IMG/VR virus record: IMGVR_UViG_3300035698_018317
Coordinates: 1-64,000 of that record
Direction: 5' to 3' (one strand)
Length of the DNA: 64,000 nucleotides
Shown: positions 1 through 16,685 of the stretch, in pieces
How the letters are laid out: each line of letters begins with the position of its first letter
How positions within the stretch are numbered: position 1 is the first letter of the stretch
Position numbers and translations under genes: made by a program
The notes under the pieces: generated by a model
The model's database searches: none
What the model was told of the DNA's origin: nothing
The model's input: only the letters and a program-made list of their open reading frames with translations

Positions 1-190
1 AACGAAATGCTTATCAGAGAATACAAAGGCGTCAAGTTCCCTTGCCCCGGTGTCTGCACAAATAAGTGGGATACCGAAGATTGGAAACAGTGGATTGAAA
101 ATCACAGAACCAATTAGTTATTAATTAACTTGTACATGATTGGTCAGTAAGTAAACGAACGAAACACTTTAGTAAAGGATTACCACCACC

Positions 191-664
191 ATGCCGAAGA
201 AACCCACCGAAACAACTGCACTCGAAGACATCCGAGCCAAAATCGAAGAAACCAAACAGGAAATGGCCGAAAGAGACCAAGTAATCGAGGCGGCGCAAGA
301 ACTGAACGAACTGAATAAGAAAGCCAATCAGCAAATCGACATGCTGAACCGACTCGCAATCTGCGCCGACGACACCGATGTTGACTGGTTGATGGTTTAC
401 AAAACGCAGTCCCACCGCTTCAACAAAGGCGGTACGCCGCTCGAAATTCTCCATCTGCTGATTGCGGGGAAAATCGAAACCAACGATAAAAACTGCCTGA
501 CCCCGGCAGATGTACGGGACCAGTTGATAGCACTGGGATACCACAAATACGCCGCTTTCAATAACAACCAAGGCTATGCGTTGGTCTACGGTGCCTTGCG
601 AAAAATCGGGGCAATGGCCGGAATGCAATGGATGAACGCCATCCGAGTCGGCATCTACATCTAA
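191..664 (+). CDS. Hypothetical protein (probable early gene)
   Basis: 157-aa ORF with AAAGGA SD upstream, followed by a 15-bp hairpin. Confidence 0.75.
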   Translation: MPKKPTETTALEDIRAKIEETKQEMAERDQVIEAAQELNELNKKANQQIDMLNRLAICADDTDVDWLMVYKTQSHRFNKGGTPLEILHLLIAGKIETNDKNCLTPADVRDQLIALGYHKYAAFNNNQGYALVYGALRKIGAMAGMQWMNAIRVGIYI

Positions 665-678
665 AACCCACTAACCAC

Positions 679-717
679 GATATCCCGTTAGGTGAAGCTC
701 ATACCTAACGGGATATC
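679..717 (+). terminator. 15-bp stem-loop after ORF 191-664
   Basis: GATATCCCGTTAGGT / ACCTAACGGGATATC, followed by TGTTT. Confidence 0.7.
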
Positions 718-935
718 TGTTTATATTCAACCCCCTGTACATGATAATCAATTGCTTATAATAAACTAATTCGTTAGCATGTACACAATGGAGCATGAAG
801 CAAAGTAACACAATACAACGAAACTGACGAAAAGAAAAGAAAAGTAATTAGTTAAGTTGTACATGATGAGATGTAAAGTAAAACAAACAATCGCCACACT
901 AACCAAAGACGCACAGAGAAGAGAAGGAAAAGCCC

Positions 936-1292
936 ATGATTACACCGGAATCAATCACGACCCTGACCGAAGCCGAAAAGCTCCAAGCAGATGCGCTCGA
1001 AGCACACTGCGACGGAATCATCGGACCCGCAAGCCAGTTGGACCCCGCCCAGAAAGATTACGTTGTCGATATGGGTGCTTACGCCAAGGCCGCCAAGAAA
1101 GCCGACAAGGACTTTGTCCTGTCCATCAAGGTCCGGGCGAACGTAGCCACACGCTACGAAGAGGCGAACTGGAAAGTCGCTTACGATGTCGCAACGTCCA
1201 AGCTGACTTTCACCATGCCCAAGGTGAAACGCACGTACAAGAAACGTGACCCCTCGCCCGCCGTAGTCGTACCGCCCGCCGAAGCTGCATAA
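936..1292 (+). CDS. Hypothetical protein ending -AEAA
   Basis: 118-aa ORF with AAGGAAA SD. Confidence 0.75.
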   Translation: MITPESITTLTEAEKLQADALEAHCDGIIGPASQLDPAQKDYVVDMGAYAKAAKKADKDFVLSIKVRANVATRYEEANWKVAYDVATSKLTFTMPKVKRTYKKRDPSPAVVVPPAEAA

Positions 1293-1338
1293 CTGCATAA
1301 CCGCATAACTCCGAAGCTGTAAAAATATTATCGGAACG

Positions 1339-1374
1339 GCCCCGCTGGAATTCCACCAGCGGGGCTTTGTTTTA
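1339..1374 (+). terminator. Intrinsic terminator
   Basis: GCCCCGCTGG / CCAGCGGGGC stem followed by TTTGTTTT. Confidence 0.75.
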
Positions 1375-1475
1375 TATTAAGTTATTAGTTAGCATGTACA
1401 TAAGAAGGTAGTTAAAAGGCAACGTGACGCAACACCCCCGACCGGATGGCCCTATATAACTGGGCACTGCGGGGG

Positions 1476-1519
1476 AAGCCCCGGCATCGTCCCCCGAAGG
1501 GATGCCGGGGCTTTGTTTT
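1476..1519 (+). terminator. Intrinsic terminator
   Basis: AAGCCCCGGCATC / GATGCCGGGGCTT stem followed by TGTTTT. Confidence 0.75.
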
Positions 1520-1577
1520 ATATTAAGTTATTAATTAGCATGTACATAAGTAAGTGTTCAGAATGAAAGGAACAACA

Positions 1578-2018
1578 ATGTCATTGAACGTGAATTTCGA
1601 CGAATGTAAACCAGCCTTTGAAAAATGCGACAAAGGCTACAAACCCGAAGGACCATTTGCCATGGTCAAACGTGACGAAAAGGGCAATATCACACATCGT
1701 CTTACCCATACATGTCGAGCCATCGTTGGAATGCTCATGGGCCTCGGCATGGGAAGAATCACAGGAAAGACGGTTAACGAGTTCACCGAAAGAAGCGAAC
1801 TCTGGCAGGATGTAATCGGACCATGTGGACCGGGATGGTGCGATGATGCAGAGGACGAAATCAAATACGTGCGAATAACCCCCGAAGATATCCGCAACCA
1901 TATCGGCTTGGCCTCCAACGTGTCCAAAGAGACAAATGCAGTCTTCTACAAGAAGCTGCGGGGCAACGTCAAGGACCGTCTGTGGAGACTGGCCCAGAAA
2001 GCCGCCCAAGCTGCATAA
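1578..2018 (+). CDS. Hypothetical protein ending -KAAQAA
   Basis: GAAAGGAACAACA-ATG at 1578 preferred over the ORF-track start at 1554. Confidence 0.75.
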   Translation: MSLNVNFDECKPAFEKCDKGYKPEGPFAMVKRDEKGNITHRLTHTCRAIVGMLMGLGMGRITGKTVNEFTERSELWQDVIGPCGPGWCDDAEDEIKYVRITPEDIRNHIGLASNVSKETNAVFYKKLRGNVKDRLWRLAQKAAQAA

Positions 2019-2064
2019 CGAAGGTCGATGAGGTGCGACCCGCCATGCAAACCAGCTCAACAAG

Positions 2065-2099
2065 AAGTCCCCGCCCCGGATGGGTGGGGACTTTCCTTT
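2065..2099 (+). terminator. Intrinsic terminator
   Basis: AAGTCCCCGCCC / GGGTGGGGACTT stem (one G-T pair) followed by TCCTTT. Confidence 0.7.
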
Positions 2100-2157
2100 A
2101 TATTAAGTTATTAGTTAGCATGTACATAAGTAAGTGTTCAGAACGAAAGGAAACGAC

Positions 2158-2343
2158 ATGGACGCAAATCAGGCAGCAGACAAACTGGCAAAAGCCGCTA
2201 GTAAAGACACCAAAGGCAAAGGCACCGACCATCTAGGCACCAGTATGAGAGACATGCTGAAGGCTGGTGTAAGCGACGAGGTGCTGCTGACAGGCATGAG
2301 TGTGGCATCAGGGTACTTATCCCCCGAGTCCGCCGTAGCCTAA
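2158..2343 (+). CDS. Small hypothetical protein
   Basis: GAAAGGAAACGAC-ATG; sits in a motif/hairpin cassette. Confidence 0.65.
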   Translation: MDANQAADKLAKAASKDTKGKGTDHLGTSMRDMLKAGVSDEVLLTGMSVASGYLSPESAVA

Positions 2344-2364
2344 CCCCCCGCCCCCTAACCCTTG

Positions 2365-2392
2365 GCCCCGCCCCCTCCGGGCGGGGTCTCTT
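2365..2392 (+). terminator. GC-rich hairpin/terminator
   Basis: GCCCCGCCC / GGGCGGGGT stem followed by CTCTT and the conserved motif. Confidence 0.55.
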
Positions 2393-2458
2393 ATATATTA
2401 AGGTATTAATTAGCATGTACAGGGATTACTTTACTAATTAGCATGTACAAGATAGTGC

Positions 2459-2659
2459 ATGAGCAAGTCGAAGACCCTCATCATTGCTGCTCTGCTGTTG
2501 GCCCTCCCTGCTGGTATCGTACTCGCAGGAACATGGCTGACAGTGCAACGGCACAAACGGAAAGGACTCACCGATGAACATCAAGCTCGAAGCAATGGAA
2601 CAGGCACGCAGACAGGAGCAGGAACGACTCACCACGAACTGCTCACCGTGTACTCCTGA
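2459..2659 (+). CDS. Small protein with N-terminal hydrophobic segment
   Basis: 66 aa, LIIAALLLALPAGIVLAG; directly downstream of two TGTACA motifs. Confidence 0.5.
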   Translation: MSKSKTLIIAALLLALPAGIVLAGTWLTVQRHKRKGLTDEHQARSNGTGTQTGAGTTHHELLTVYS

Positions 2660-2806
2660 CGAACACTGTGCCGAGTGCCCCGGTCAAGGGTAACACGACA
2701 ACATACCAGCATCCCCGACCCCGCAGCAATGCGGGGCGGGGTTGCTTAGTTACCTTGTACATGATGGGGTGTAAGATACACCACCATGAACGAAAGGAAA
2801 CACATC

Positions 2807-3100
2807 ATGGACGCATCGAGAGACGAGAGAGTGATAGCAATCAGAGCCGACAACCTCATCGGTACAGACTCATGCTCATTCATTGATGAATGCTTGAGTG
2901 ATGCTGACATCGTAGAGGAACTAGACAGGCGTAACATAGTGTCACCTGTCGATGCTATCAAGCACCTCATCGACGCACAGCATGGACAGTACGAGCGAGG
3001 GTTGGGTACACGAGCAGGCGACGATGATGACCCCATCCTCATTCAGTTCAACGACTGGGTAGTCAGACGTGACGCTCACCTACTCACACTACCCAGCTAA
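2807..3100 (+). CDS. Hypothetical protein
   Basis: GAAAGGAAACACATC-ATG at 2807; followed by a 14-bp hairpin. Confidence 0.65.
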   Translation: MDASRDERVIAIRADNLIGTDSCSFIDECLSDADIVEELDRRNIVSPVDAIKHLIDAQHGQYERGLGTRAGDDDDPILIQFNDWVVRRDAHLLTLPS

Positions 3101-3112
3101 CCCAGCCCAGCC

Positions 3113-3146
3113 CCCAGCCCTGCCCCGGTCAGGGGGCAGGGCTGGG
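3113..3146 (+). terminator. 14-bp GC hairpin closing the cassette region
   Basis: CCCAGCCCTGCCCC / GGGGCAGGGCTGGG; no clear U-tract. Confidence 0.5.
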
Positions 3147-3547
3147 TGACGTAGTGACGTACCATGGTATGTTGCTACCTATATATGTAAAGGTATTGAT
3201 ACGATGCACCCGAAAAAAAACCACGCCACACTAAAACATAATTTAAAATTAAAAAATTATTTTCAAAAAAGTATGGCACCCACCCCCCTACCCCCCCCTC
3301 CCCCACAATAACGCACCTCTGTCTTAGTTTTGGGCCGTGGGGAAATTCGCATACATGTTACATAATTGATAACATATCAACTTTTGGGGTTTTGTATAGG
3401 GGTTAAAAAATATACACCGAATAAGGTCCAAAAAATCGGCGGGGAGTTTTGCCATATCTACATAACTTTTTTGTCAGAAATTGTTGTTTTTCCGTATAGT
3501 GTTGATATAATCCACTAATCAACTGTTAACCCAAAAGGAATAAGATT

Positions 3548-4156
3548 ATGCTAATAGGTCTCGAAAAAGAGTTTTTTTTACTGAAAGATGGTAAGCCCCA
3601 ACCTTTGAATGCGATTTCACTTCCATGTGATGAGTGTGGTTGGCTGGTAGAAGCTAGAGGTGGACCTCATCTATCAATCATAGATGCTGTTTTTAGCCTT
3701 AAATCTGCCGTTTATAAGATAGAAAGGTCTATTGCAGCGATGAATGCCAAACTGCCTGCTGACGAACCCCCATATGTTTTGAGCGACAATCCTGTAATGA
3801 AAATTGACCGTGCTACTAAAGTGAAGTGTGCTCGTAACTTTGCTAAAGGTATCATTAGTTATCAAAACTTACATGGTCATCAAAGCCACCGTCATTCTCT
3901 TTCAGAAGGTACAGCGGGTGTTCATGTAAGCTTTACAGAGAGCCAAGCGGTTTACCACGATAAGAAAAAGTATGAATATCATCGCAATTTCGATTGGCCG
4001 CAGATTTTCATCAAGTTAGATAAAGCTTTTGCTGAAGAAATCAAAGAATCAAAACGGCGTCCCGGTTTCTATGAATTGAAAACAGACGGTAGGGTAGAAT
4101 ATCGTTCCCTTCCTGCTAATGTAGATTTGGATAAGCTGATTAACGTATTGATGTAA
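3548..4156 (+). CDS. Minimal COOH-NH2 ligase (glutamate-cysteine ligase-like / phiEco32-type)
   Basis: Motifs IGLEKEFFL, LVEAR, TAGVHVSF and GRVEYRSLP; AAAGGAA SD. Confidence 0.6.
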   Translation: MLIGLEKEFFLLKDGKPQPLNAISLPCDECGWLVEARGGPHLSIIDAVFSLKSAVYKIERSIAAMNAKLPADEPPYVLSDNPVMKIDRATKVKCARNFAKGIISYQNLHGHQSHRHSLSEGTAGVHVSFTESQAVYHDKKKYEYHRNFDWPQIFIKLDKAFAEEIKESKRRPGFYELKTDGRVEYRSLPANVDLDKLINVLM

Positions 4157-4223
4157 ATAAATAGTCCTGTTTCGTTCTAGCAGCGTGCTCCGTCTTTGGC
4201 GAGATGATTGGCCCGCTGCTTTT

Positions 4224-4463
4224 TTATAGTTCTGCCCGTGCTTGTCGTCTATCTTCTAAGTCATCCCAGAGTCCACATTGGGCTAATTCGTTATCTGACA
4301 TTTGAGCGGTTGCTCGTTCTATTTGGGCTTCTAGTCTAGCTACTTTATCTTGGTCATAGTCCATAGCGTTTTCGGCTCTGCTTAGAGTGTCCATCCAGCC
4401 CAGTACTCTTTCTATTCTTTGGGTGGCTTCTTTTAACTTGATATGTTCTAAGAATGATTTCAT
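4224..4463 (-). CDS. Small protein with capsid-targeting-like N-terminus
   Basis: Starts MKSFLEHIKLKEA; ATGA overlap with the upstream gene. Confidence 0.65.
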   Translation of the reverse strand: MKSFLEHIKLKEATQRIERVLGWMDTLSRAENAMDYDQDKVARLEAQIERATAQMSDNELAQCGLWDDLEDRRQARAEL

Positions 4464-4738
4464 TGTTTCCTGATGGATGGGAATTTAGGCATCGGCACAC
4501 CGGGAATCTGTCGTGTTGGTTCAGGTTCAGTATCAATGAGTTCATCGGCGAATTGTTCAACAGCTTGTCCGTATTGTTTATACAAGTTTTGTAATTGTTG
4601 TATTTTCCCTCTGTCATCCAGTTCGACATGTTCCCAGCTATCTTTTATACCTTGAAGTTGTCTTATTATTACATCGAGTAATTTATCTACGCCAAATTCA
4701 CGTTCTTCTTTAAGTTGCCATTCTTTATATGATTTCAT
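4460..4738 (-). CDS. Small protein with capsid-targeting-like N-terminus
   Basis: Starts MKSYKEWQLKEE. Confidence 0.7.
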   Translation of the reverse strand: MKSYKEWQLKEEREFGVDKLLDVIIRQLQGIKDSWEHVELDDRGKIQQLQNLYKQYGQAVEQFADELIDTEPEPTRQIPGVPMPKFPSIRKQ

Positions 4739-4743
4739 AATCG

Positions 4744-4959
4744 TTATTGTAAAACTCTCATCAGGTCGGTTAATTCTCCCACAGTTGCTAACTCTCCTTC
4801 TTCGCCATTAACATTTAAATGGTCTTGATATGCGAACGCTTTGTTAGCTTCATGTACATTAGAAATCATGTATAAAACTGCCATGCGTATCAGATATTTT
4901 TGTCGCTCACGAGTGTCTTCATTTAATTGTACGTTTTTATATTCTTTGAATGATTTCAT
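4744..4959 (-). CDS. Small protein with capsid-targeting-like N-terminus
   Basis: Starts MKSFKEYKNVQLNED; TATATA 5 nt upstream of the ATG. Confidence 0.7.
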   Translation of the reverse strand: MKSFKEYKNVQLNEDTRERQKYLIRMAVLYMISNVHEANKAFAYQDHLNVNGEEGELATVGELTDLMRVLQ

Positions 4960-4995
4960 AACTTTATATACTCATTCTAAAATTATTATTTTGGA

Positions 4996-5340
4996 TTAGC
5001 CATTTAATCTATAGACGAGTAGTGCATCTTCCATATTATAAGCTTCATATGAGTTCCATTTGATTGGATATTTATCAGGGTTATTTACGTAATTTATAAT
5101 TTGGAATTTTGAAACATATTTGTTTATTATGGCTTTAATGCCATCTTTAGAGATGGATGTTTTATGACATGCTCTTGTTTCAGGTGTAAAATCCCAACGT
5201 ATTTCAATATCTTTGTATTCGCTATAATCGGTCCATTTTGATGTTGACCGTTTGGAAAGTTTAAGTAATCTCTTAGAGAGGGGTGGGTTTAAGGTTATGG
5301 CTGGTTTTTCCCATCCTAATTTTAGTTTCCTTGTATTCAT
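4996..5340 (-). CDS. Hypothetical protein
   Basis: 114-aa ORF, no motif recognised. Confidence 0.55.
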   Translation of the reverse strand: MNTRKLKLGWEKPAITLNPPLSKRLLKLSKRSTSKWTDYSEYKDIEIRWDFTPETRACHKTSISKDGIKAIINKYVSKFQIINYVNNPDKYPIKWNSYEAYNMEDALLVYRLNG

Positions 5341-5406
5341 AACATATTATAAGGAATAATTAGGATTTTGCAAAGACTAATGGATTTATATTTAAAAGGG
5401 AGCACC

Positions 5407-5610
5407 ATGAAATTTGAAGAATTTGTTATTTCTAAAGAAGGCCAACTTAACGAAGGAGATACCTCACAGAGTTATTCCCTTGCAAACAGATTATATATTG
5501 CTTTAGAAGAGGAAGTAGCTCGTTGGGGACCAATGCAACGTTTTGGCCGTGAAATTAGGGCCAATGAAGAACTTTTACAAGCTCTTTCAGCTTGGCGTAA
5601 GATACACTAG
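5407..5610 (+). CDS. Small protein with capsid-targeting-like N-terminus
   Basis: AAAAGGGAGCACC-ATG; starts MKFEEFVISKEGQLNEG. Confidence 0.65.
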   Translation: MKFEEFVISKEGQLNEGDTSQSYSLANRLYIALEEEVARWGPMQRFGREIRANEELLQALSAWRKIH

Positions 5611-5612
5611 GT

Positions 5613-6092
5613 TTATTCACCATGCCATTCATTTATATGGCCACTATATGGAATACATTCTTTAAATTTTTGTATTAATACTGAATCTGGTAATGCTTCG
5701 TTAATACAATCGTTATAGTCTTCCATATTGAGGGATATTTTATAGACATGAGATGAATTACATCCATACCAATTATCTGACATTGACCGCATCGCAAGTT
5801 CTTTGTTATCTACGGATAAACAAATTGCTTCATACCAACTTGTTTTTTTGCCTGTAAATTCATCAAATTTATGGTTTAACTTTAGAGTCCAGAAATCCCA
5901 TCTTAAAGGTTTGCCTTGTTTTTTACAATATTGAGGCAAGTTGGTTGATTCAACGAATTTCAAGAAACACTTTTTTATAAATTGTTTAACTTTGTTTCTA
6001 TCTTTTCTTCTTTCTCTAGACTCTTCAGTGCCTCGTACTACTAACACGGCAAAGGCAATAACGGCTGTTGTGATTATTATTGGTATCAACAT
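5613..6092 (-). CDS. Hypothetical protein with N-terminal TM anchor
   Basis: 159 aa, hydrophobic N-terminus, GGAGA SD. Confidence 0.65.
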   Translation of the reverse strand: MLIPIIITTAVIAFAVLVVRGTEESRERRKDRNKVKQFIKKCFLKFVESTNLPQYCKKQGKPLRWDFWTLKLNHKFDEFTGKKTSWYEAICLSVDNKELAMRSMSDNWYGCNSSHVYKISLNMEDYNDCINEALPDSVLIQKFKECIPYSGHINEWHGE

Positions 6093-6184
6093 AGTTTTCT
6101 CCTATCACATTCATTATAGGTGTGATATGGGGTCTTGTAAATCAGGTTATTGACAACTGTATAGAATAATGATATACTGTATTT

Positions 6185-6373
6185 ATGAGTGAATGGAAAG
6201 CGTATCCTGTAGAGTCATTAGGCATTGTTAGAATGATAGCCCATCCTACTACTGGTAGTGATTCGGACCTTTTAGATGATGAGAAAGTCATAGTTGCTTT
6301 GTCTCATCAGCTTGCTGCTGTGACATCAGAATTAAATGAATGTAAAGAATATATTCTTAGTTTTGACACTTAA
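6185..6373 (+). CDS. Small hypothetical protein
   Basis: 62-aa ORF preceded by TTGACA and TAGAAT/GATACT promoter-like elements. Confidence 0.45.
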   Translation: MSEWKAYPVESLGIVRMIAHPTTGSDSDLLDDEKVIVALSHQLAAVTSELNECKEYILSFDT

Positions 6374-6641
6374 TCCAAGTTTTATTAACAACCCCTTCGA
6401 ACGTATCATCTGTGAACATATATGTTTTTGAGGATAATCCACCTTCATCAATTCTAATTGTGGCTTCCCATTGGCTATCATCTGAGCCTTTATCGAATTT
6501 GATATACCAAGCTACGTCATCAATTTCTTTTAATTGATTTTGTATTGTGCTTGGTTTAGAATTGTTTGAGGGGTCATTTGGTTTAGAGGGGCATCCTAAA
6601 ACAAACATAAGCATAGTCAATAACAGGATTGTAGATTTCAT
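6357..6641 (-). CDS. Putative lipoprotein
   Basis: Signal peptide with lipobox VLGC. Confidence 0.6.
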   Translation of the reverse strand: MKSTILLLTMLMFVLGCPSKPNDPSNNSKPSTIQNQLKEIDDVAWYIKFDKGSDDSQWEATIRIDEGGLSSKTYMFTDDTFEGVVNKTWIKCQN

Positions 6642-6652
6642 ACTGTTATATA

Positions 6653-7100
6653 GGTTATTAACTTGGTATAATACTGTGGGCGAGATATTTTTTGGAGATG
6701 GGACTCTTATATGTTATGGAATTGAAAGAAAGTATGCGAGAGTGGATGGATGTGGACATGGCTCAACATGAGTTAGCTAAGTGTTTAGGTGTTTTTGGTC
6801 TTCATACGGAAATGCGGCATTATAAAAGTGTTTATTGGTGTAACAATGATTGGGGTAATGAGTTATATGAAATTTTATTAAAATTGGCATCATTAGGTTT
6901 GCTTGAGCATCGTGAAGAGCCGGATATTCAATTTAGGTGGAACCCTAGATGTTCGCCACCTGATGATGACGGGTTGATAAGTTAATAACTTGGTATAATA
7001 CTGGGGGCGAGAAATTTTTTGATGGTGGGAGCCGCTGGAAAGTTATTAACTTGATATACTACTGGGAGCGAGATATTTTTTTGCGATGGGAGCCGCTGGG
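6653..7100 (+). repeat. Three copies of a ~50-nt motif GTTA(T/A)TAACTTG(G/A)TATA(A/C)TACTG.GG.GCGAGA.ATTTTTT
   Basis: Copies start at about 6654, 6981 and 7042; the last two share GGGAGCCGCTGG. Confidence 0.75.
6716..6985 (+). CDS. Hypothetical protein
   Basis: ORF lying between motif copies 1 and 2. Confidence 0.55.
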   Translation: MELKESMREWMDVDMAQHELAKCLGVFGLHTEMRHYKSVYWCNNDWGNELYEILLKLASLGLLEHREEPDIQFRWNPRCSPPDDDGLIS

Positions 7101-7110
7101 TGCCCGGACA

Positions 7111-7162
7111 CGTCTTGGGTAACAATATACAACGTTAGTGTTGTATATTGTTACCCAAGACG
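7111..7162. repeat. Perfect 23-bp inverted repeat with 6-nt loop
   Basis: CGTCTTGGGTAACAATATACAAC-gttagt-GTTGTATATTGTTACCCAAGACG. Confidence 0.9.
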
Positions 7163-7167
7163 AGATG

Positions 7168-7425
7168 TTAATTCGTTGTGGATAGCACAACTGCGGGGAC
7201 GCCGCCATCTGGGATGTCTTCTTCATCCCAACCGTTCTTCCTGTCTGATTCGGTTATAGGCCACGGGTATGTGTCGCCGCTCCAGCTATTCTCTGCTACA
7301 TACTTAACACCTTGGTAAGCATTATACAGAGGCGAGTAACTATTACCTTCACCATCTTTAGACATCACAACAATACTATCTTGGTCAAGCTTTTGTAGTT
7401 CGGCTATCAATTCAGAAACTTTCAT
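7168..7425 (-). CDS. Hypothetical phage protein
   Basis: 85 aa, MKVSELIAELQKL-type start; ATGA overlap with the upstream gene. Confidence 0.7.
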   Translation of the reverse strand: MKVSELIAELQKLDQDSIVVMSKDGEGNSYSPLYNAYQGVKYVAENSWSGDTYPWPITESDRKNGWDEEDIPDGGVPAVVLSTTN

Positions 7426-7805
7426 TTTTTAAGCCCTAACATTCTTAGTATCGTTGGAAGGGCTTCGTGACGTTTAACTATTCTGTTATACCTTCTTTTT
7501 ACTAATCTCGCTTTTTTGGATGTTCTAGTAGTCCATACAGGAGTTTTACTTAATCTTTTAATATTATAAACGGACGATATAGAGATGGCCAATTGCTCTT
7601 CTTTTTTGATATGAGCCTCAAGGATTTTCCCAAGGGATTTCCAAGAATAATAACTGATACGGAAGTTTTCACGTTCTAAGAAACGATTCATTATTACAAG
7701 ACCATCGGAGATTTCTAAGTCTTTTCCCCAAACCATATACTTCTTACGTGAGCCATACTCTTTCTTAAGTGTTATCAGATATTTGTCGCTCTCATTTATT
7801 TGCAT
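7422..7805 (-). CDS. Hypothetical protein
   Basis: 127-aa ORF with AAGGAAA SD. Confidence 0.65.
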   Translation of the reverse strand: MQINESDKYLITLKKEYGSRKKYMVWGKDLEISDGLVIMNRFLERENFRISYYSWKSLGKILEAHIKKEEQLAISISSVYNIKRLSKTPVWTTRTSKKARLVKRRYNRIVKRHEALPTILRMLGLKK

Positions 7806-7868
7806 GTTGTTTTCCTTGGTAAGCGTCTAGTATACCAAAAAATTATGATTTTGTAAAACATCTTTTTA

Positions 7869-8078
7869 TTACGACACTTTGTTGATAGCATCTTTCCACG
7901 ACGCAAACCACAGAGCATCTTCAAACGCTTCTTCCCAACCATTACTGCGGCTCCCATCGGGAAAAAACATCTCGCTATAATACTTATTCCCTTGGACTAA
8001 GACGTACCTAGGATATTCTTCTGGACCTACACGTTTAATTATTTTTTGTTTAGCAAATTCTGGGTTGTATTCATTCAT
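7869..8078 (-). CDS. Hypothetical protein, paralog of 8071-8307
   Basis: Shared KRVGPE..PRYVL.QG.KYY and AF.DALWF segments. Confidence 0.65.
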   Translation of the reverse strand: MNEYNPEFAKQKIIKRVGPEEYPRYVLVQGNKYYSEMFFPDGSRSNGWEEAFEDALWFASWKDAINKVS

Positions 8079-8307
8079 TTTTGTTTTTCTTAAAGAAGTT
8101 TCGATTAAAGTATGATTCTCCACCAGCTAGCGTTTCAAACCACAATGCGTCTGGAAACGCTCCAAACTCACCATCGGCACAATAATACTTACCTCCTTGA
8201 GCCAAGACGTACCTTGGAAATTTTTCTGGACCTACACGTTTAATAGTGATATCAAAATTATCACGAATCCATTCTTTCCATAATTTCAAACTCTTATATT
8301 CTTTCAT
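8071..8307 (-). CDS. Hypothetical protein, paralog of 7869-8078
   Basis: GAAAGG SD; starts just past the end of CRISPR array 1. Confidence 0.65.
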   Translation of the reverse strand: MKEYKSLKLWKEWIRDNFDITIKRVGPEKFPRYVLAQGGKYYCADGEFGAFPDALWFETLAGGESYFNRNFFKKNKNE

Positions 8308-8333
8308 TTTATTACCTTTCAAAATATCCTAGT

Positions 8334-8973
8334 CAAACACCCCTACGCATGTAGGGAAAACCTCGGACGACGCTGTTTATGGCGGACCCTCCGTAGGGAC
8401 ACCCCTACGCATGTAGGGAAAACGACCTGCTTGAACGCTTGGAAATTTCTGGTACAGGGACACCCCTACGCATGTAGGGAAAACAAATAAAACAATCAGG
8501 AGACAAAGAGTTGGCTAAGGGACACCCCTACGCATGTAGGGAAAACGCTCTGTAAGCTGTCGTAAGGAAGACTCAGTGGGGACACCCCTACGCATGTAGG
8601 GAAAACTTAGAACTTTCTATGTTGCCGTTAGAACCCTCAATGGGGACACCCCTACGCATGTAGGGAACACGCTGCTGATTTGGCAACATTCAGAGCAGAT
8701 GAAGGGACACCCCTACGTTGTAGGGAAAAATTAAACAATCGTTTTTTCAACAGAAAACCCATTGGTACACCCCTACGCATATGTAGGGAAAACATAAAAA
8801 GAGGAGAAATAAAACGAGAACACTGGGTACACCCCTACGAATGTAGGGAACCTATCGTTGCGATACTCAGACGTGGTATTCCTTGGGGACACCCCTACGC
8901 ATGGTAGGGAAAATGGCCAAGTGGTTCACCGTGGCCAACCATGAACCGGGAACACCCTTACATGTAGGGATAC
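8334..8973 (-). CRISPR. CRISPR array 1: 11 repeats, 10 spacers, type I-E
   Basis: 28-nt repeat GTTTTCCCTACATGCGTAGGGGTGTCCC (minus sense). Plus-strand repeat starts at 8334, 8396, 8457, 8519, 8579, 8643, 8704, 8764, 8826, 8886 and 8948; spacers 32-36 nt. Confidence 0.97.
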
Positions 8974-8975
8974 AA

Positions 8976-9545
8976 TCATCGGCTTAACAGCAACATTCCA
9001 AATCCAAAAGATTTACCTTTGCCTATACCTTTTTTAATGGTTTGAGAGAAATCTTCTGTAGAAGTTATTTTTAACTTACCTTTGAAAACAACTTTGTTAT
9101 GTGTTTGTTTACCTATTTTGTCTTTGAATTGTATTGATGATGGTTGTCCTATATTAAGACCACATATAGTAAACCCATGCTGTTTACCTTTTCTCACAAT
9201 CCAACGCACTAAATCTTTTTCTTCAGTAATAGCTCTATATTTTTTATTTTGTTTAACAACAGGATTTGCTGTTAATACAAAATTAAATATTTTTCCGTCC
9301 TTTACACCGACATCAAATTGTTTAACATCTGCGTGGAACTTTTTATCTGACCAATTAGGTTTTGTTTCAGACTGTACCAAAACAGAGTCATCACAAACAA
9401 CATATAGGACATTATGGTTCTGTCTAGCCATTCCTTTTTCATCGGGGAATCCAGACATTACGGTTCTATGTATTTGATAATTTGATGCAATAAGTCTATA
9501 ACATTCTGGGGTTGGTTTAAATTTTAATTTTGATAAGAACATCAT
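8976..9545 (-). CDS. cas6e: Type I-E crRNA endonuclease Cas6e
   Basis: YQIHRTV, VLVQS, F.LTANP and C-terminal G-loop GIGKGKSFGFG. Confidence 0.93.
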   Translation of the reverse strand: MMFLSKLKFKPTPECYRLIASNYQIHRTVMSGFPDEKGMARQNHNVLYVVCDDSVLVQSETKPNWSDKKFHADVKQFDVGVKDGKIFNFVLTANPVVKQNKKYRAITEEKDLVRWIVRKGKQHGFTICGLNIGQPSSIQFKDKIGKQTHNKVVFKGKLKITSTEDFSQTIKKGIGKGKSFGFGMLLLSR

Positions 9546-10162
9546 TCTCCTTTACCAAAGTCAACATGAACAGATTGGATGTTTCTAGCCCCATATACTT
9601 TATCTGATATAGGAACATCCTCAACTCGTTCGCTGTCTATTGTTTTTTCATTAGTTTCTACAATAAATCTAACAACATTTTTTGCAGGTAGTTGTTTAAG
9701 AGCATCAAATGGGTTTTCATCATTTGTGACTTTAGAGATAATTGGTGTCGTAATAGGACATGCCAACCTTCCCATATAAAGATGATAACATGGATGGTTT
9801 AAGCCTTCAGTTATTTCATCCACGAGTATGTCATCGCCTGTCAATGCGACAGTGAATTGACTATCGGAAGAGAGGTAATATCTCCATGTTTGAACACTTT
9901 GTTTCCCTTTTCCAATCAATTTAACGAAATTACCAGCATTTTGGTAGTCGCATTCTTTTACACCTTGATTATCAACTCGCACCGCCATTCGAAGGCTAAG
10001 AAGTTCCTTAGCCTTCGAATGGTTAGAACGGATTCCCATAGCGGATTTAATTAAGCCTAGTATTCCGCTATAAGTTGGTTCATTGCGAGTTTCTCGATAA
10101 ACATGCTTGCTGCTATCGCCCCAACTCTGCATACCTTTAAGTGTTAATATAATGGTTTTCAT
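9542..10162 (-). CDS. cas5e: Type I-E Cas5
   Basis: MQSWG, EPTYSGILGLI and LYMGRLACP; start moved to 10162 (AAGGGA SD). Confidence 0.93.
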   Translation of the reverse strand: MKTIILTLKGMQSWGDSSKHVYRETRNEPTYSGILGLIKSAMGIRSNHSKAKELLSLRMAVRVDNQGVKECDYQNAGNFVKLIGKGKQSVQTWRYYLSSDSQFTVALTGDDILVDEITEGLNHPCYHLYMGRLACPITTPIISKVTNDENPFDALKQLPAKNVVRFIVETNEKTIDSERVEDVPISDKVYGARNIQSVHVDFGKGE

Positions 10163-11284: not shown

Positions 11285-11815
11285 TTATGCCATTTCTGGC
11301 GAGTTAATTTTTTCTTTTTTTGATTCTACTTTTTTTACTGGTTGTTCCCAAAAATCTTTTGAGAATTTGTTTTGAACCCACATATCATCTTCTTTCCACC
11401 ATGTTAATCCTTGTAACAAATCAGCCCAATTAATCGGAATTCTTTTAGCTGCTGATAATCGTATCAGTGTTCCAAGATGTTGGAATACTGGGATTTCTTC
11501 TGTAGCATCTAGGAAAGAAAGAAATTTCCTATTCATTCCTTCTTCGCTATATTCCTTAATTAATGGTTTAATACTTTTACCAAATGATTTTGTGTCTGTA
11601 TGACGTGGGTTGATTGCGAATAAGCGTGCTGTATGAATGAAACAGAGATTACTCCAAGATTCATTTTGTGTTGGAAGGTATGGGTAAATATACCTACCAA
11701 TTTGAAACAGCTTAGTTGGGTTACTTTTCTTAAATTTTGACAATATAGCTGGGCCTCTTTTGCTTTTTGTCAATTTAACTAAATGGTCTATAAAATTGTC
11801 TATTCTTTTATTCAT
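11285..11815 (-). CDS. cse2: Type I-E small subunit Cas11 (Cse2)
   Basis: Lies between cas8e and cas7; helical, with INWADLL and KDFW motifs. Confidence 0.88.
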   Translation of the reverse strand: MNKRIDNFIDHLVKLTKSKRGPAILSKFKKSNPTKLFQIGRYIYPYLPTQNESWSNLCFIHTARLFAINPRHTDTKSFGKSIKPLIKEYSEEGMNRKFLSFLDATEEIPVFQHLGTLIRLSAAKRIPINWADLLQGLTWWKEDDMWVQNKFSKDFWEQPVKKVESKKEKINSPEMA

Positions 11816-13232
11816 TTTTCTTTCCTTTATTAAACAGGATGATTTCGAAACTTTTTAAATTTCCTTTTTGGTACAAGTATTCTAACACATTTTTTCGGCT
11901 CCCACTCATTAACTTTCTTGTTTCGTTCATGAATAATTTGTGGGCCACTTCTCTTATTTTTTTCACAAAAGATATTTTTGCTTCTACTGTCTTTTGAGAC
12001 ATGAATTCTAGAAATAAGGTGTTAGCTTCGCTCCAGAATAAAACTTTAACTTGTTCTGGACTTTCTAAAGTAAATTGTTTATAGAGACGATAAACAAAAC
12101 TTCTCAGGTGAACTCCTACACGATTAGCTTCTTCAACAACTTGACATATAATTTCCTGAATATCATCATTTTTGATACAGTCGGTTGAAAGAGGTAGTAC
12201 ATCTTCTGAAATCATTTTATATTTGGTTAATTTATCATCCATATAAAATCCATATGATTGATATCCAAAATCAATCATATCATCGAAGATGTCTAAGTTT
12301 TCATTGTTTGCAAAAACATACTCACCGTCTGCAACTCCAGCCTTGACAGAAATCACAAAGGATTTGAAATTATTCCATAAATGTTCAGCATGGGAAAAAC
12401 GGAGAGGTTTATACCCATCTTTGGTGTTTTTGTATACTACGAATGGGTCACGTAATCCTTCAATCGGTTCATTACCCTTATCCCAATACATATAGGAAAA
12501 AGTTCCATTGTCATTAGGAAGTAATTTGATGCTTCTGGAGCAACGAGTCAAATATTGCATATATCCACGGACTTTGTTATCATTTAATACCGGGGACTCA
12601 TCCTCCCAAACGGGACTATCTTCTTCTGTCTGCGGAATGTTAAGATTTTCATCTAAAGGATGGGCATTAAGCATAAATGTTTGGAATAAATTCTTTCCAG
12701 TAAGAAGAACGGGCATTCCACGTTGGCTAGACGCATGAAAAGTAGAACGATGTTCGCCAAGTCCTTTGCCAGTATTTAAGGCAAAAGATTGAAGTGTCAT
12801 CAATTGAATAGCTACATCTTCAGCTTGAACAGACGTAGTTTTGATAAAATTTCTTGATGACCATGATGCATCGGCATCTGTTAAAAAATTAAGTCTATTA
12901 ACAGATTCCTTTTTCTTTGTTTGAAGTTTGGGGTCTTGTAGGAAAGGCTTTTTGGTGTCTAGTAAATCAAAGCAAAAAGAGTTCAAATAATTGGTGGTTG
13001 ATTTATCAAAACAACCTTTTTCCCAAAGTGCTTTCCACTCTTCCTCATTGTTCAATCCGTAAGCTCTATAAAGAACGGGCAGGAACATCCTAGTGAAGGC
13101 CAAATTTTGAAGAGGCTGAGAAAATGCCGTAGATTCAATTTCGTGAGCATGTTCAAAGACGGAGATAAGGTTATGGCTTCCTTGTAACGTTGAAATCCAA
13201 TTTTCAGTTTTTAAGTCGTATGATGTCGTCAT
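11808..13232 (-). CDS. cas8e: Type I-E large subunit Cas8e (Cse1)
   Basis: YDL..ENWI, PLQNLAF.R, EEEW..LWEKG and FDL....PFLQ; GAAAGGAA SD gives a start at 13232. Confidence 0.9.
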   Translation of the reverse strand: MTTSYDLKTENWISTLQGSHNLISVFEHAHEIESTAFSQPLQNLAFTRMFLPVLYRAYGLNNEEEWKALWEKGCFDKSTTNYLNSFCFDLLDTKKPFLQDPKLQTKKKESVNRLNFLTDADASWSSRNFIKTTSVQAEDVAIQLMTLQSFALNTGKGLGEHRSTFHASSQRGMPVLLTGKNLFQTFMLNAHPLDENLNIPQTEEDSPVWEDESPVLNDNKVRGYMQYLTRCSRSIKLLPNDNGTFSYMYWDKGNEPIEGLRDPFVVYKNTKDGYKPLRFSHAEHLWNNFKSFVISVKAGVADGEYVFANNENLDIFDDMIDFGYQSYGFYMDDKLTKYKMISEDVLPLSTDCIKNDDIQEIICQVVEEANRVGVHLRSFVYRLYKQFTLESPEQVKVLFWSEANTLFLEFMSQKTVEAKISFVKKIREVAHKLFMNETRKLMSGSRKNVLEYLYQKGNLKSFEIILFNKGKKNE

Positions 13233-13265
13233 GTTATTTCCTTTCTTAATTATCATCATGTCAAG

Positions 13266-13294: not shown

Positions 13295-13341
13295 GAGAAA
13301 TCCCATATTGTTTTTATTTGAAAAACATATTTTTTAGAAAC

Positions 13342-13740
13342 TTAACACCCCTACGAATGTAGGGAAAACAAAAAAAAGAAGAAGGAATTTCTCCCACGAT
13401 AAGGGACACCCCTACGTTTGTAGGGAAAACTTCTCTAAAAATTTACGAGCATCAGCAACTAGCGGGACACCCCTACGCATGTAGGGAAAACCAGCCGCAG
13501 AGAGATTCCAGAGCGTTCAGTTAGGGGCACCCCTACGCATGTAGGGAAAACGCTAGGTCAGTTCTTCGGGGCCACGTCGCACGAAAGGAACACCCCTACG
13601 TATGTAGGGAAAACCTTTCTGAGTTGCAGATTCGGTCGTGACAACGTTAGGGACACCCCTACGCATGTAGGGAAAACAAGCAATAGATAAAGCATTGAGC
13701 GAAGCTCAATGAGGGACACCCCTACGCATGTAGGGAAAAC
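13342..13740 (-). CRISPR. CRISPR array 2: 7 repeats, 6 spacers, between cas3 and cas8e
   Basis: Same repeat as array 1. Plus-strand starts at 13342, 13403, 13464, 13524, 13587, 13650 and 13713; spacers 32-35 nt. Confidence 0.97.
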
Positions 13741-16368: not shown

Positions 16369-16685
16369 CACCCACCAATGCCCATGTTGTTCTTGTAAGG
16401 CCATATGATACGGCCAGATTGTAAGATATCCCACACCATTTTTTTCCATACTTTTCTTATATGGATATGAAATTCTTCAGATGTTACTAATTTTTTTTCA
16501 ATAAGTTGGAATCCCAATTCAGAATCATCAACACCCATTCTATTAAGAGCTTCCCACAAATATCCTACTATTTTATCAACTGTTCTATATTTCTTTCTAA
16601 TATCTTTATCATGCATTGCGACTTCTGCATGTTCGAATATTAGTTCGGCTGCTTCGCACACACGTTCTGATAATTCTGTACACAT
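16368..16685 (-). CDS. Small helical protein whose stop overlaps the cas3 start; paralog of 16691-16981
   Basis: Starts MCTELSERVCEAAELIFEH. Confidence 0.75.
   Translation of the reverse strand: MCTELSERVCEAAELIFEHAEVAMHDKDIRKKYRTVDKIVGYLWEALNRMGVDDSELGFQLIEKKLVTSEEFHIHIRKVWKKMVWDILQSGRIIWPYKNNMGIGG

What the first reader, a model, noticed from the sequence alone, without database searches (positions are those of the whole stretch)
679..3146. Array of hairpin-promoter-ORF cassettes bounded by near-identical direct repeats (PeSL-like shuffling module)
Seen: each small ORF is preceded by a GC hairpin plus the core TTTATATTAAG(T/G)TATTA(A/G)TTAGCATGTACA. Copies at 1517-1572 and 2097-2152 match at 54 of 56 nt and include the SD. 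Known: T4-type phages carry promoter-early-stem-loop (PeSL) elements whose homologous recombination excises and shuffles small-ORF modules. Inference: this is an independent cassette system with a different core motif, letting the phage swap host-takeover genes.
Basis: partly seen in the sequence, partly recalled or inferred. Interest (0 to 1): 0.7.

Follow-up and report, generated by a model that had tools for sequence, protein, structure and literature searches.

The report
Phage promoter-terminator gene cassette array
Window 1-3150 is the right-hand end of a bay of more than 23 kb holding about 55 tiny, separately switched genes in a huge salt-lake phage; each gene is framed by the same ~30-base promoter and usually a terminator hairpin, and related phages carry different genes between the same frames, so the frames probably also act as swap points.

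Summary
Window 1-3150 holds 10 copies of a conserved motif (consensus tTATTAAgTaATTArTTAnnwTGTACAT). Six follow very stable GC hairpins with T-runs, which look like intrinsic terminators. All six small ORFs sit behind a copy. The 1517-1572 / 2097-2152 repeat is 54/56 identical.

Overlapping metagenome contigs extend the array more than 20 kb upstream of the window. It has 42 copies on the + strand, against 1 in the other 222 kb of the contig. The host is a huge myophage with a gp23-type capsid and its own type I-E CRISPR-Cas. Five independent assemblies and one divergent relative cross the junction at ~3150, so it is not a chimera.

The motif is not sigma-70-like. TGTACA is nearly invariant across lineages. 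One third of copies have ATG exactly 9 nt downstream.

Relatives keep the frames but differ in content. ORF1, ORF4 and ORF5 are each missing somewhere. A single promoter remains at the empty ORF1 site, and gene blocks are transposed. Within the sampled population the order is fixed, and the one deletion contig is ambiguous.

Verdict: a PeSL-like composite promoter-terminator cassette system with a new promoter type. The regulatory role is very likely. The recombination role is well supported by comparison but not shown directly.

The parts
1..117 (+). 3' end of a 51-aa cassette gene that starts 38 nt left of the window
   Evidence: gene called in L013 at 17396-17551. Homologues in relatives.
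104..145 (+). Promoter-motif copy (TGTACA at 131-136) in front of ORF1
191..664 (+). ORF1, 157 aa, ORFan. Present in relative L137 (67-69% identity) but absent from lineages B and C
679..727 (+). Terminator-like hairpin (16-bp stem, -25.5 kcal/mol) plus T-rich tail
736..747 (-). Inverted copy of the motif core (TGTACAnnnTAA), 44 nt upstream of the next direct copy
753..827 (+). Promoter copy (TGTACA 780-785), with ATG 9 nt downstream opening only a 10-codon ORF (795-827)
836..872 (+). Promoter copy (TGTACA 858-863) in front of ORF2
936..1292 (+). ORF2, 118 aa, ORFan
1338..1376 (+). Terminator hairpin (-24.5 kcal/mol) plus T-run
1371..1467 (+). Promoter copy (TGTACA 1395-1400) followed by no ORF ('empty' unit). 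Relative L135 has a small membrane-protein ORF cassette at this position
1475..1516 (+). Terminator hairpin (-30.7 kcal/mol) plus T-run
1517..1572 (+). Repeat copy 1: promoter (TGTACA 1541-1546), leader and GAAAGGAA Shine-Dalgarno
   Evidence: 54/56 identical to 2097-2152.
1578..2018 (+). ORF3, 146 aa, ORFan, with homologues at 43-63% identity in five relatives
2064..2096 (+). Terminator hairpin (-24.6 kcal/mol). Relatives L136 and L137 have a promoter + tRNA-like RNA cassette here instead
2097..2152 (+). Repeat copy 2: promoter (TGTACA 2121-2126), leader and Shine-Dalgarno
2158..2343 (+). ORF4, 61 aa. Absent from lineages B and C
2364..2392 (+). Terminator hairpin (-22.9 kcal/mol)
2393..2449 (+). 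Two tandem promoter copies (TGTACA 2416-2421 and 2444-2449). The same tandem pair precedes the ORF6 homologue in relatives B and G
2459..2693 (+). ORF5 (2459-2659), a 66-aa membrane protein whose ATG lies exactly 9 nt after TGTACA, plus an overlapping 39-aa Cys-rich ORF (2574-2693). ORF5 is absent in G and H. The 39-aa ORF is a separate cassette in B
2708..2746 (+). Terminator-like hairpin (-32.2 kcal/mol) with a weak T tail
2743..2770 (+). Promoter copy (TGTACA 2756-2761) in front of ORF6
2807..3100 (+). ORF6, 97 aa (104 aa if it starts at 2786), the last gene of the array
3113..3146 (.). Large GC hairpin (-36 kcal/mol, no T-run) that closes the array. GC content and coding strand change here
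   Evidence: One assembly ends at 3151.
3222..3450 (.). AT-rich, low-complexity intergenic stretch to the right of the array. It is conserved at the array's right end in a divergent relative (L200)

Best explanation
Window 1-3150 is the last 3 kb of an accessory gene bay of at least 23 kb in a huge myophage from Antarctic-type salt-lake metagenomes. The bay is built from about 55 mostly single-gene transcription units, all on one strand. A typical unit has three parts. (1) A ~30-nt phage-specific promoter with an AT-rich upstream part, TTArTTA, a 3-nt variable spacer, then a nearly invariant TGTACAT. (2) A start codon exactly 9 nt after TGTACA (leaderless or 8-nt leader, about one third of units), or a 20-70-nt leader with a strong GAAAGGA-type Shine-Dalgarno. 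This is followed by a small ORFan, or in a few units a non-coding RNA. (3) A GC-rich hairpin plus T-run (intrinsic terminator), whose T-run runs into the next promoter. This layout insulates each gene and places all of them under one transcription signal. That signal is not the host sigma-70 consensus, so it is presumably read with a phage-encoded or phage-delivered factor. Because the same 30-56-nt element recurs at every gene boundary, homologous recombination between copies can delete, duplicate, move or exchange whole units without breaking their expression. This can happen within one genome or between co-infecting relatives, and it is the PeSL principle of T4-type phages. Shown: the anatomy, motif conservation and strand bias, linkage to the phage, and cassette-level differences between relatives with the motif at the joints. 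Inferred: that the motif is a promoter, where transcription starts, which polymerase or factor reads it, that recombination occurs in the motif itself, and that the genes act early in host takeover.
For: Anatomy.

Motif statistics. 42 copies on the + strand lie in 23 kb of array, against 1 in the remaining 222 kb. A weight matrix from 92 copies in three lineages gives the consensus. After TTArTTAnnn the next hexamer is TGTACA in 150 cases and a single-mismatch variant in only 4, across five lineages whose proteins have diverged 20-60%. Y14/R15 is conserved at 92-93%, also in the 59 copies with no ATG there, and 32 of 91 copies have ATG/GTG at exactly +15. No sigma-70-type match falls on the motif.

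Linkage to the phage. The junction is crossed at 100% identity by JGI, ENA and Logan assemblies of different samples. The same right-hand boundary sequence occurs in divergent relative L200.

Cassette turnover. Shared genes are mostly collinear, but about 45% of genes are lineage-specific. ORF1 is absent in B and C, where one promoter copy is followed by ORF2's leader. In L137 the ORF1 cassette is flanked by two ~35-nt near-identical promoter copies. ORF4 is absent in B and C, ORF5 is absent in G and H, and the 39-aa ORF sits in a different slot in B. Three-gene and one-gene blocks are transposed in L137 and L139, and neighbouring cassettes are swapped in A and B. Homology blocks typically start 10-32 nt before and end 5-13 nt after the T of TGTACA.

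Traces of recombination between copies. Tandem promoter copies occur at 2393-2449, and five lie in tandem at the end of L137. Empty units exist. The spacer triplet is lineage-specific: GCA or AGT in 31 of 41 copies here against 1 of 35 in L137, Fisher p = 2e-11, with a run of nine AGT copies, p = 0.002. GC content per kb varies from 34 to 53% within the array, as expected for genes of mixed origin.
Against: No transcript data exist, because no RNA run was listed, so promoter function and start site are inferred. No RNA polymerase, MotA or AsiA was found in the 225 kb available. Only two sigma-like genes were found, far from the array, so the reader of the motif is unknown.

About 25 assemblies of this population have identical order. 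Eight runs gave only one deletion joint (1370->2097). It spans a 34-nt exact repeat and could be an assembler path. Three recombinant patches within the population have their boundaries inside ORFs, not at motifs.

Blocks ending at the motif are expected anyway if the motif is conserved by selection and whole genes are the units replaced. Breakpoint position alone therefore does not prove that crossovers occur in the motif. Only 28 of 50 called genes have a motif within 120 nt upstream, and the rest lie in short operons.
Confidence: 0.66

Rival explanations
1. The elements are ordinary regulatory signals only. They are phage-specific promoters and terminators, and they repeat because each small gene is its own transcription unit. 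Cassette turnover happens by illegitimate recombination or by general homologous recombination in flanking genes. The motif sits at the joints only because selection keeps it there.
For: The within-population mosaics (L010, L017, L019) have their boundaries inside coding sequence. The order is identical in about 25 assemblies. The breakpoint pattern is also predicted by this model.
Against: One promoter copy remains at the empty ORF1 site, while two near-identical copies flank the cassette in L137. Tandem promoter arrays and empty units exist. The spacer triplet is homogenised within lineages. The 54/56 identity extends beyond the promoter into the leader.
Confidence: 0.24
2. The invariant palindromic core ((CA)TGTACA(TG)) is mainly an operator for a dimeric phage regulator that switches the whole bay on or off. 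The true polymerase contacts are the TAnnwT just upstream, a -10-like element, with transcription starting right after TGTACAT.
For: The conservation is symmetric, with A at -1 and T at +6. Inverted copies of the core lie exactly 44 nt (about four helical turns) upstream in 7 of 42 units. TAnnwT occupies positions -5 to 0, with T6/R7 as a possible Y-R start.
Against: No regulator has been identified. The asymmetric TTArTTA part is as conserved as the palindrome. Y14/R15 is more conserved than T6/R7. This reading is compatible with the main explanation rather than opposed to it.
Confidence: 0.15
3. The array lies in a long terminal repeat of the phage genome, like the SPO1 host-takeover module or the T5 pre-early region. 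That would explain the higher read depth and the contig that ends at 3151.
For: Depth of 1-3200 is 1.3-2.7 times that of 3300-6000 in eight runs. One 21.7-kb contig ends at 3151.
Against: The ratio is not a constant 2. The depths are assembler word depths at 3-16x coverage, with a 14-point GC difference. Part of the right side is split between two haplotypes (3255-5083 is replaced in X4 and X10). IMG/VR classes the record as linear, with no end repeats found.
Confidence: 0.08
4. The GC-rich left part is a chimeric mis-join of another phage to the AT-rich huge phage.
For: GC is 50% against 36%. The motif is confined to the left part. The nearest complete relative, LR756511.1, lacks the motif and the helicase.
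Against: The junction is crossed identically by five assemblies from different samples and assemblers and by Logan contigs. Divergent relative L200 has the same boundary and neighbouring genes. GC falls gradually to 34-40% at the far left of the array while the motif persists.
Confidence: 0.01
5. This is an integron-like site-specific cassette system in which TGTACA is the crossover site of a dedicated recombinase.
For: The short palindromic core at every cassette boundary is nearly invariant.
Against: No integrase or recombinase gene lies in or beside the 23-kb array: precomputed Pfam hits show only a UvrD helicase, a Zn-ribbon and DUF7417. The position relative to start codons is fixed (ATG 9 nt downstream) and the elements are oriented, which points to an expression signal.
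Confidence: 0.03

Closest known systems
PeSL / PmSL elements (promoter-early or promoter-middle stem-loops) of T4-type phages (Arbiol et al. 2010, PMC2839356; Comeau et al. 2014, PMC4122927)
   Same: Both are composite stem-loop (terminator) + promoter + SD/start elements. Both lie in the intergenic spaces of runs of small ORFans in hyperplastic regions. Copies are conserved within a genome, and indels, replacements and displacements between relatives lie next to the elements. Degraded, half and tandem copies occur (searches compared).
   Different: The promoter part is not a sigma-70 (-35/-10) or MotA-box promoter but TTArTTA-N3-TGTACAT. A third of the units have the start codon 9 nt after the core, and some units carry RNAs. 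The phage is not a T4-type phage in the strict sense: it is a huge phage whose capsid protein is only about 29% identical to those of T4-like cyanophages and 78% identical to that of a 595-kb uncultured phage. Minicircle formation, shown by PCR for RB49/phi1, is untested here.
Host-takeover / pre-early gene blocks of large lytic phages (SPO1 genes 37-60; T5 pre-early region), cited from my own knowledge
   Same: Both are a one-strand block of many small, phage-specific genes, each or nearly each with strong expression signals of its own, beside a genome landmark.
   Different: Those blocks use host sigma-A/sigma-70 promoters and lie in terminal repeats. Here the promoter type is different, terminal redundancy is not shown, and timing and function are unknown.
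Promoters of phage-encoded single-subunit RNA polymerases (T7 type)
   Same: Both have a long (about 17-23 nt), nearly invariant, oriented sequence directly upstream of a purine-rich start region. Both are repeated many times in one genome and absent from the host-type consensus.
   Different: No T7-type polymerase gene (PF00940) was found in the 225 kb available. The conserved Y-R dinucleotide 9 nt downstream of the core fits multi-subunit polymerases as well.
Integron gene cassettes
   Same: Both are a one-way array of small promoterless-size genes separated by repeated, partly palindromic elements, with variable content between relatives.
   Different: There is no integrase and no attC-like structure. 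Each unit carries its own promoter and terminator.

Membership tests
PeSL (T4-type promoter-early stem-loop elements) | Stem-loop (terminator) located directly upstream of a promoter, forming one composite intergenic element | tested here: met
   Six of 10 copies in the window follow hairpins of -23 to -32 kcal/mol with T-runs. In three lineages, 44% of copies have a hairpin of -15 kcal/mol or stronger within 90 nt upstream, against 14% of control positions.
PeSL (T4-type promoter-early stem-loop elements) | Promoter part is a sigma-70-like early promoter (-35, N17, -10), or a MotA-box middle promoter in PmSLs | tested here: not met
   There is no conserved -35. The information content lies at TTArTTA-N3-TGTACAT. 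The consensus scan finds no sigma-70-type site on the motif. No MotA or AsiA was found in the 225 kb, though the control genomes did not match either, so this absence is weak.
PeSL (T4-type promoter-early stem-loop elements) | Shine-Dalgarno sequence and start codon of the downstream small ORF at the 3' end of the element | tested here: met
   GAAAGGAA-type SD 5-8 nt before ATG for ORF1-4 and ORF6. 32 of 91 units instead have ATG/GTG exactly 9 nt after the core.
PeSL (T4-type promoter-early stem-loop elements) | Concentrated in hyperplastic regions of small ORFans and rare in conserved or structural regions | tested here: met
   42 copies in 23 kb of ORFans against 1 in 222 kb that includes the structural genes. 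All tested ORFs lack Pfam and PHROG families.
PeSL (T4-type promoter-early stem-loop elements) | Insertions, deletions, replacements and displacements between related phages lie at or beside the elements | tested here: met
   ORF1, ORF4 and ORF5 are each present or absent in different lineages. A single promoter copy sits at the empty ORF1 site, and gene blocks are transposed. Caveat: the relatives are fairly distant (40-89% amino-acid identity), and three very recent mosaics have boundaries inside ORFs.
PeSL (T4-type promoter-early stem-loop elements) | Recombination between tandem elements yields deletion products or minicircles (shown by PCR in RB49/phi1) | tested here: inconclusive
   One Logan contig joins 1370 to 2097 across a 34-nt exact repeat, with k = 31, so an assembler path cannot be excluded. 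No such joint was found in four other runs or in the 24 assemblies read. Only contigs, not raw reads, were available.
PeSL (T4-type promoter-early stem-loop elements) | Carried by a T4-type myovirus | tested here: inconclusive
   Gp23-type capsid (E = 4e-86), Gp20-type portal (E = 2e-75) and tail sheath are present. However, identity to T4-like cyanophages is only about 29%. The nearest record is a 595-kb uncultured huge phage (78%).
T7-type single-subunit RNA polymerase promoters | A cognate single-subunit RNA polymerase gene in the same genome | tested here: inconclusive
   PF00940 was not found in the 225 kb. The control genomes did not match either, and CheckV rates the record 44% complete, so the gene could lie in the missing part.

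The most novel reading that the evidence does not exclude
The motif TTArTTA-N3-TGTACAT is a previously undescribed class of phage promoter. It is read by an unidentified phage-encoded or virion-delivered factor or polymerase rather than by the host sigma-70 holoenzyme. It launches leaderless or 8-nt-leader mRNAs and small RNAs from a plug-in gene bay. The same bay, with the same frames and ever-changing content, is carried by a widespread clade of huge aquatic phages, some of which have their own CRISPR-Cas. It would serve as their exchange platform for host-takeover and counter-defence genes.
Probability: 0.35. Interest if true: 0.65.

Novelty: new variant of a known kind. Interest (0 to 1): 0.5.

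Why it matters
If the reading holds, the PeSL principle is not a peculiarity of T4-type coliphages and vibriophages. In that principle, expression signals double as portable recombination joints, so small accessory genes can be swapped as ready-to-run units. Here the principle recurs with a different promoter chemistry in a clade of huge phages.

The finding gives a simple sequence handle (the motif) for locating the variable, probably early-acting gene set of these uncultured phages. It also points to an unknown transcription specificity worth identifying. The roughly 150 motif copies in five lineages form a ready data set for defining that promoter. The ORFans between them are candidates for host-takeover or anti-defence functions.

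Tried and rejected
- Nucleotide search of 1-3200 against GenBank phages found no match.
- Exact and degenerate motif scans of IMG/VR gave only single chance matches.
- The search for related loci in IMG/VR with ORF1, ORF3 and the helicase found no relatives.
- Pfam and PHROGs on the window's seven array ORFs and the neighbouring 202-aa ORF (3548-4156), plus PHROGs on ten larger array ORFs, gave nothing usable. The protein atlas for ORF3 gave nothing.
- No RNA sequencing run was listed, so no 5' ends could be mapped.
- ARAGORN and Rfam on the array and its relatives found no tRNA and no family above threshold.
- The chimera hypothesis is rejected.
- Most 'loose ends' and 'joints' from read laying were traced to other motif copies of the same array, not to rearrangements.
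- Differences in gene lists between assemblies proved to be gene-caller differences on identical DNA.
- The nearest complete huge-phage record, LR756511.1, has no motif copy, no helicase homologue and no homologue of the 202-aa neighbour. It gave no synteny information.
- A more distant helicase relative (45% identity, L160) lacks the motif.
- A literature search for TGTACA-type phage promoters found nothing relevant.
- CRISPR spacers of the phage do not match the array.
- A search for MotA, AsiA, a T7-type RNA polymerase and RpoB in the contig found none.
- The genome search could not reach the long metagenome contigs that hold relatives.
Full report
**1. What is in the sequence.**
All ORFs of window 1-3150 lie on the + strand and are small: ORF1 191-664, ORF2 936-1292, ORF3 1578-2018, ORF4 2158-2343, ORF5 2459-2659 with an overlapping 39-aa ORF, and ORF6 2807-3100. 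A copy of one motif precedes each of them. The exact core TTAGCATGTACA occurs six times on the + strand, and a sister form (..TTAGTTA..yTTGTACATGAT) occurs four more times. No shuffle of the window reaches the observed count.

Seven GC-rich hairpins of -23 to -37 kcal/mol lie between the genes. Four are strong matches in the terminator scan, and most are followed by a T-run that merges into the AT-rich upstream part of the next motif copy.
- The copies before ORF1 and ORF2 have no hairpin directly upstream.
- Two units are empty (1372-1517, and 780-857 with a 10-codon ORF).
- The array does not begin at 679.

**2. Where it sits.**
The window is the first 64 kb of a 225,284-bp linear IMG/VR record, rated 44% complete by CheckV. 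The rest of the record has 36.8% GC, against about 50% for 1-3150. It encodes a Gp23-type capsid protein, a Gp20-type portal (with an intein), a large terminase, a tail sheath and baseplate proteins. It also carries a type I-E CRISPR-Cas system (Cas3, Cse1) with two repeat arrays. Its capsid protein is 78% identical to that of a 595-kb uncultured phage and about 29-33% identical to jumbo and T4-like phages. The element is therefore a huge myophage with a distant T4-type head module.

The composition jump raised the possibility of a chimera. That is excluded:
- Contigs from JGI, ENA and Logan assemblies of different samples cross position 3150 at 100% identity. One ENA contig of 21.9 kb reaches window 5649.
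- A divergent relative (L200) ends its array at the same intergenic sequence (window 3222-3450) and has homologous neighbours.

**3. True extent.**
Overlapping contigs (L163, L162/L140, L013) extend the sequence 20,062 nt to the left of the window. Across the resulting 23.2 kb, nearly all genes are small and on the + strand. About 50 genes are called. The only recognisable ones are a UvrD-type helicase, a Zn-ribbon protein and a DUF7417 protein. There are 42 motif copies on the + strand. The other 222 kb of the record has one. GC per kilobase varies between 34% and 53% inside the array, and the far-left end is as AT-rich as the backbone. The left boundary was not reached.

**4. The motif.**
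Ninety-two copies from three lineages give the consensus tTATTAAgTaATTArTTAnnwTGTACATrrrrGnGYR. Counting from the T of TGTACA as position 0:
- TTA at -10 to -8 is 91-97% conserved.
- T6 is 80% conserved and G11 is 71%.
- Position 14 is a pyrimidine in 93% of copies, and position 15 is a purine in 92%.
- The Y14/R15 pair is kept in the 59 copies that have no start codon there, while 32 of 91 copies have ATG or GTG exactly at 15-17.

Given TTArTTAnnn, the next hexamer is TGTACA 150 times and a one-mismatch variant only 4 times, in five lineages whose proteins are 40-89% identical. The element is oriented. The few minus-strand matches are inverted copies of the core that sit exactly 44 nt upstream of 7 of the 42 direct copies, for example window 736-747.

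There is no conserved -35, and the sigma-70 consensus scan does not pick the motif. A good sigma-70-type site does precede the first backbone gene, at 3471-3500. I conclude that the motif is a promoter of a phage-specific type.

The start point is inferred. It is either the conserved Y-R at +14/+15, which makes a third of the mRNAs leaderless, or the T-R at +6/+7, which uses TAnnwT at -5 to 0 as a -10-like element and gives 8-nt leaders. The reader of the motif is unknown. No T7-type or multisubunit polymerase, MotA or AsiA was found in the 225 kb, and the two sigma-like genes lie at 131 and 148 kb. No RNA run was listed, so 5' ends could not be checked.

**5. Is there cassette exchange? Within the population.**
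About 25 assemblies from the same lake system carry the array in the same order at about 100% identity. Apparent differences in gene lists were gene-caller differences. Three variants (L010/L032, L017, L019) carry patches of 140-900 nt at 70-86% identity. The patch boundaries lie inside ORFs and the motif is unchanged within them.

Contigs of eight runs were laid on window 1-6000. One contig joins 1370 to 2097, a deletion of ORF3 between two motif copies. The shared 34-nt stretch exceeds the assembler's 31-mer, and the deleted part is also present in that run, so the contig is not decisive. Four further runs show no such joint. Most loose ends were simply other motif copies of the array.

**6. 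Is there cassette exchange? Between relatives.**
The helicase led to L137 and L139 (76-78% identity). A metagenome scan for the inverted-plus-direct motif pair found arrays in at least eight more contigs, with 15-38 motif copies each. All keep the motif in front of their small genes. Shared genes are largely collinear, but about 45% of the genes in overlapping spans are lineage-specific.

In the finding's own region:
- ORF1 is present in L137 but absent from lineages B and C.
- ORF4 is absent from B and C.
- ORF5 is absent from G and H.
- The 39-aa ORF that overlaps ORF5 here is a cassette of its own in B, placed before the tandem promoter pair instead of after it.
- L136 and L137 have a promoter plus a tRNA-like RNA where the window has the 2064-2094 terminator.
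- L135 has a small membrane-protein cassette where the window has the empty unit.

At the empty ORF1 site, lineage B has a single promoter copy followed by ORF2's leader. In L137, two copies sharing about 35 nt flank the ORF1 cassette. That is the pattern expected from recombination between direct repeats.

The order is not fixed either:
- A three-gene block lies directly upstream of the helicase in L137 but 9 kb further left here.
- A one-gene block is displaced in L139.
- Adjacent cassettes are swapped in A and B.

Further traces of exchange among copies:
- Tandem promoter duplications occur at 2393-2449, and five copies lie in tandem at the end of L137.
- The 3-nt spacer is lineage-specific: GCA or AGT in 31 of 41 copies here against 1 of 35 in L137 (p = 2e-11).
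- There is a run of nine consecutive AGT copies (p = 0.002).

Nucleotide homology blocks between lineages usually begin 10-32 nt before and end 5-13 nt after the T of TGTACA. A selectively conserved motif would produce the same picture, so this last point is consistent but not discriminating.

**7. Comparison with known systems.**
The closest known system is the PeSL/PmSL elements of T4-type phages. These are composite terminator-promoter-SD elements in hyperplastic regions that sit at indels between relatives and can recombine to excise minicircles (PMC4122927; PMC2839356).

The present elements share the architecture, the genomic setting and the association with cassette turnover. They differ in four ways:
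- The promoter type is neither sigma-70-like nor a MotA box.
- A start codon lies at a fixed 9 nt in a third of the units.
- Some units carry RNA cassettes.
- The host phage is a huge phage, not a T4-type phage in the strict sense.

The defining feature 'sigma-70-like early promoter' is not met, and the minicircle test could not be made. I therefore file this as working like PeSLs, a new variant of the kind, not as a member of the described families. Host-takeover blocks of SPO1 and T5, T7-type promoters and integron cassettes share single features only.

**8. Unexplained.**
Depth of 1-3200 is 1.3-2.7 times that of 3300-6000 in all eight runs. Possible causes are GC bias at low coverage, strain sharing or a repeat. 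A co-occurring haplotype that replaces 3255-5083 (X4, X10) explains only part of it. The function of every ORF in the region remains unknown.

**9. Verdict.**
Direct recombination products, transcript starts and gene function remain unproven. Novelty: a new variant of a known kind. Interest: moderate.

Noticed in passing
window 8322-8913, 11808-13259 (-), 13330-13740, 13774-16449 (-): The phage carries its own type I-E CRISPR-Cas system: Cse1, Cas3 and two repeat arrays of about 10 and 7 repeats with a ~61-nt period. Its spacers do not match the cassette array, the rest of the contig or the relatives fetched.
   Followed up: partly
L137 15820-15927; L136 733-840: In two relatives, a conserved ~105-nt structured RNA sits behind its own motif copy between the ORF3 and ORF4 homologues. 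It has a tRNA-like acceptor stem and a GGTTCGATTCC T-arm plus a second T-arm-like hairpin. ARAGORN and Rfam do not recognise it, and it is absent from the window.
   Followed up: partly
20 kb left of the window (window coordinate about -5115, = L137 8666); L137 9652 = L139 14055: Motif copies followed by conserved stretches without an ORF. These are candidate small RNAs expressed from the same promoter type.
   Followed up: no
window 3255-5083: In runs X4 and X10, contigs leave the window sequence after 3254 and rejoin at 5084. This is a co-occurring haplotype with a different insert just right of the array. The replacing sequence is not in the 225-kb record.
   Followed up: partly
window 1-3200 versus 3300-6000: Assembler word depth of the array part is 1.3-2.7 times that of the adjacent backbone in all eight runs examined. 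The cause is unexplained (GC bias, strain sharing or a repeat).
   Followed up: partly
window 736-747 and six other places in the array upstream of the window: An inverted copy of the motif core lies exactly 44 nt upstream of the direct copy, preceded by CCCC. It could be a divergent promoter or a paired operator.
   Followed up: partly
G000 81805-84306 (portal); L139 8062-10713 (helicase): Inteins interrupt the Gp20-type portal gene of this phage and the UvrD-type helicase of one relative.
   Followed up: no
window 3200-3310: Runs of A, of T and of C (about 20 C in 30 nt) lie in the intergenic stretch right of the array. Several assemblies break at 3334-3371, just right of this stretch, and the adjacent 3222-3450 region is conserved in relative L200.
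   Followed up: partly
window 21580-21865: A long imperfect tandem repeat with a period of 9-12 nt (TTCTAC/TGCTTC-type) lies inside a minus-strand coding region. It probably encodes a low-complexity, Glu/Val/Ala-rich protein segment.
   Followed up: no
window 29540-31096 (-): An ORF with poly(A) polymerase / CCA-adding enzyme head domain and RNA-binding domain is encoded by the phage, although no tRNA gene was found in the window.
   Followed up: no
L160 (JGI Ga0395908_0000138) 4400-10000: A more distant phage (helicase 45% identical) lacks the TGTACA motif. Instead it repeats a different intergenic element (..GGTTCGATTCCCCGGACGGGACTTTC..) in front of several small genes. This may be an analogous cassette frame with different signals.
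   Followed up: no
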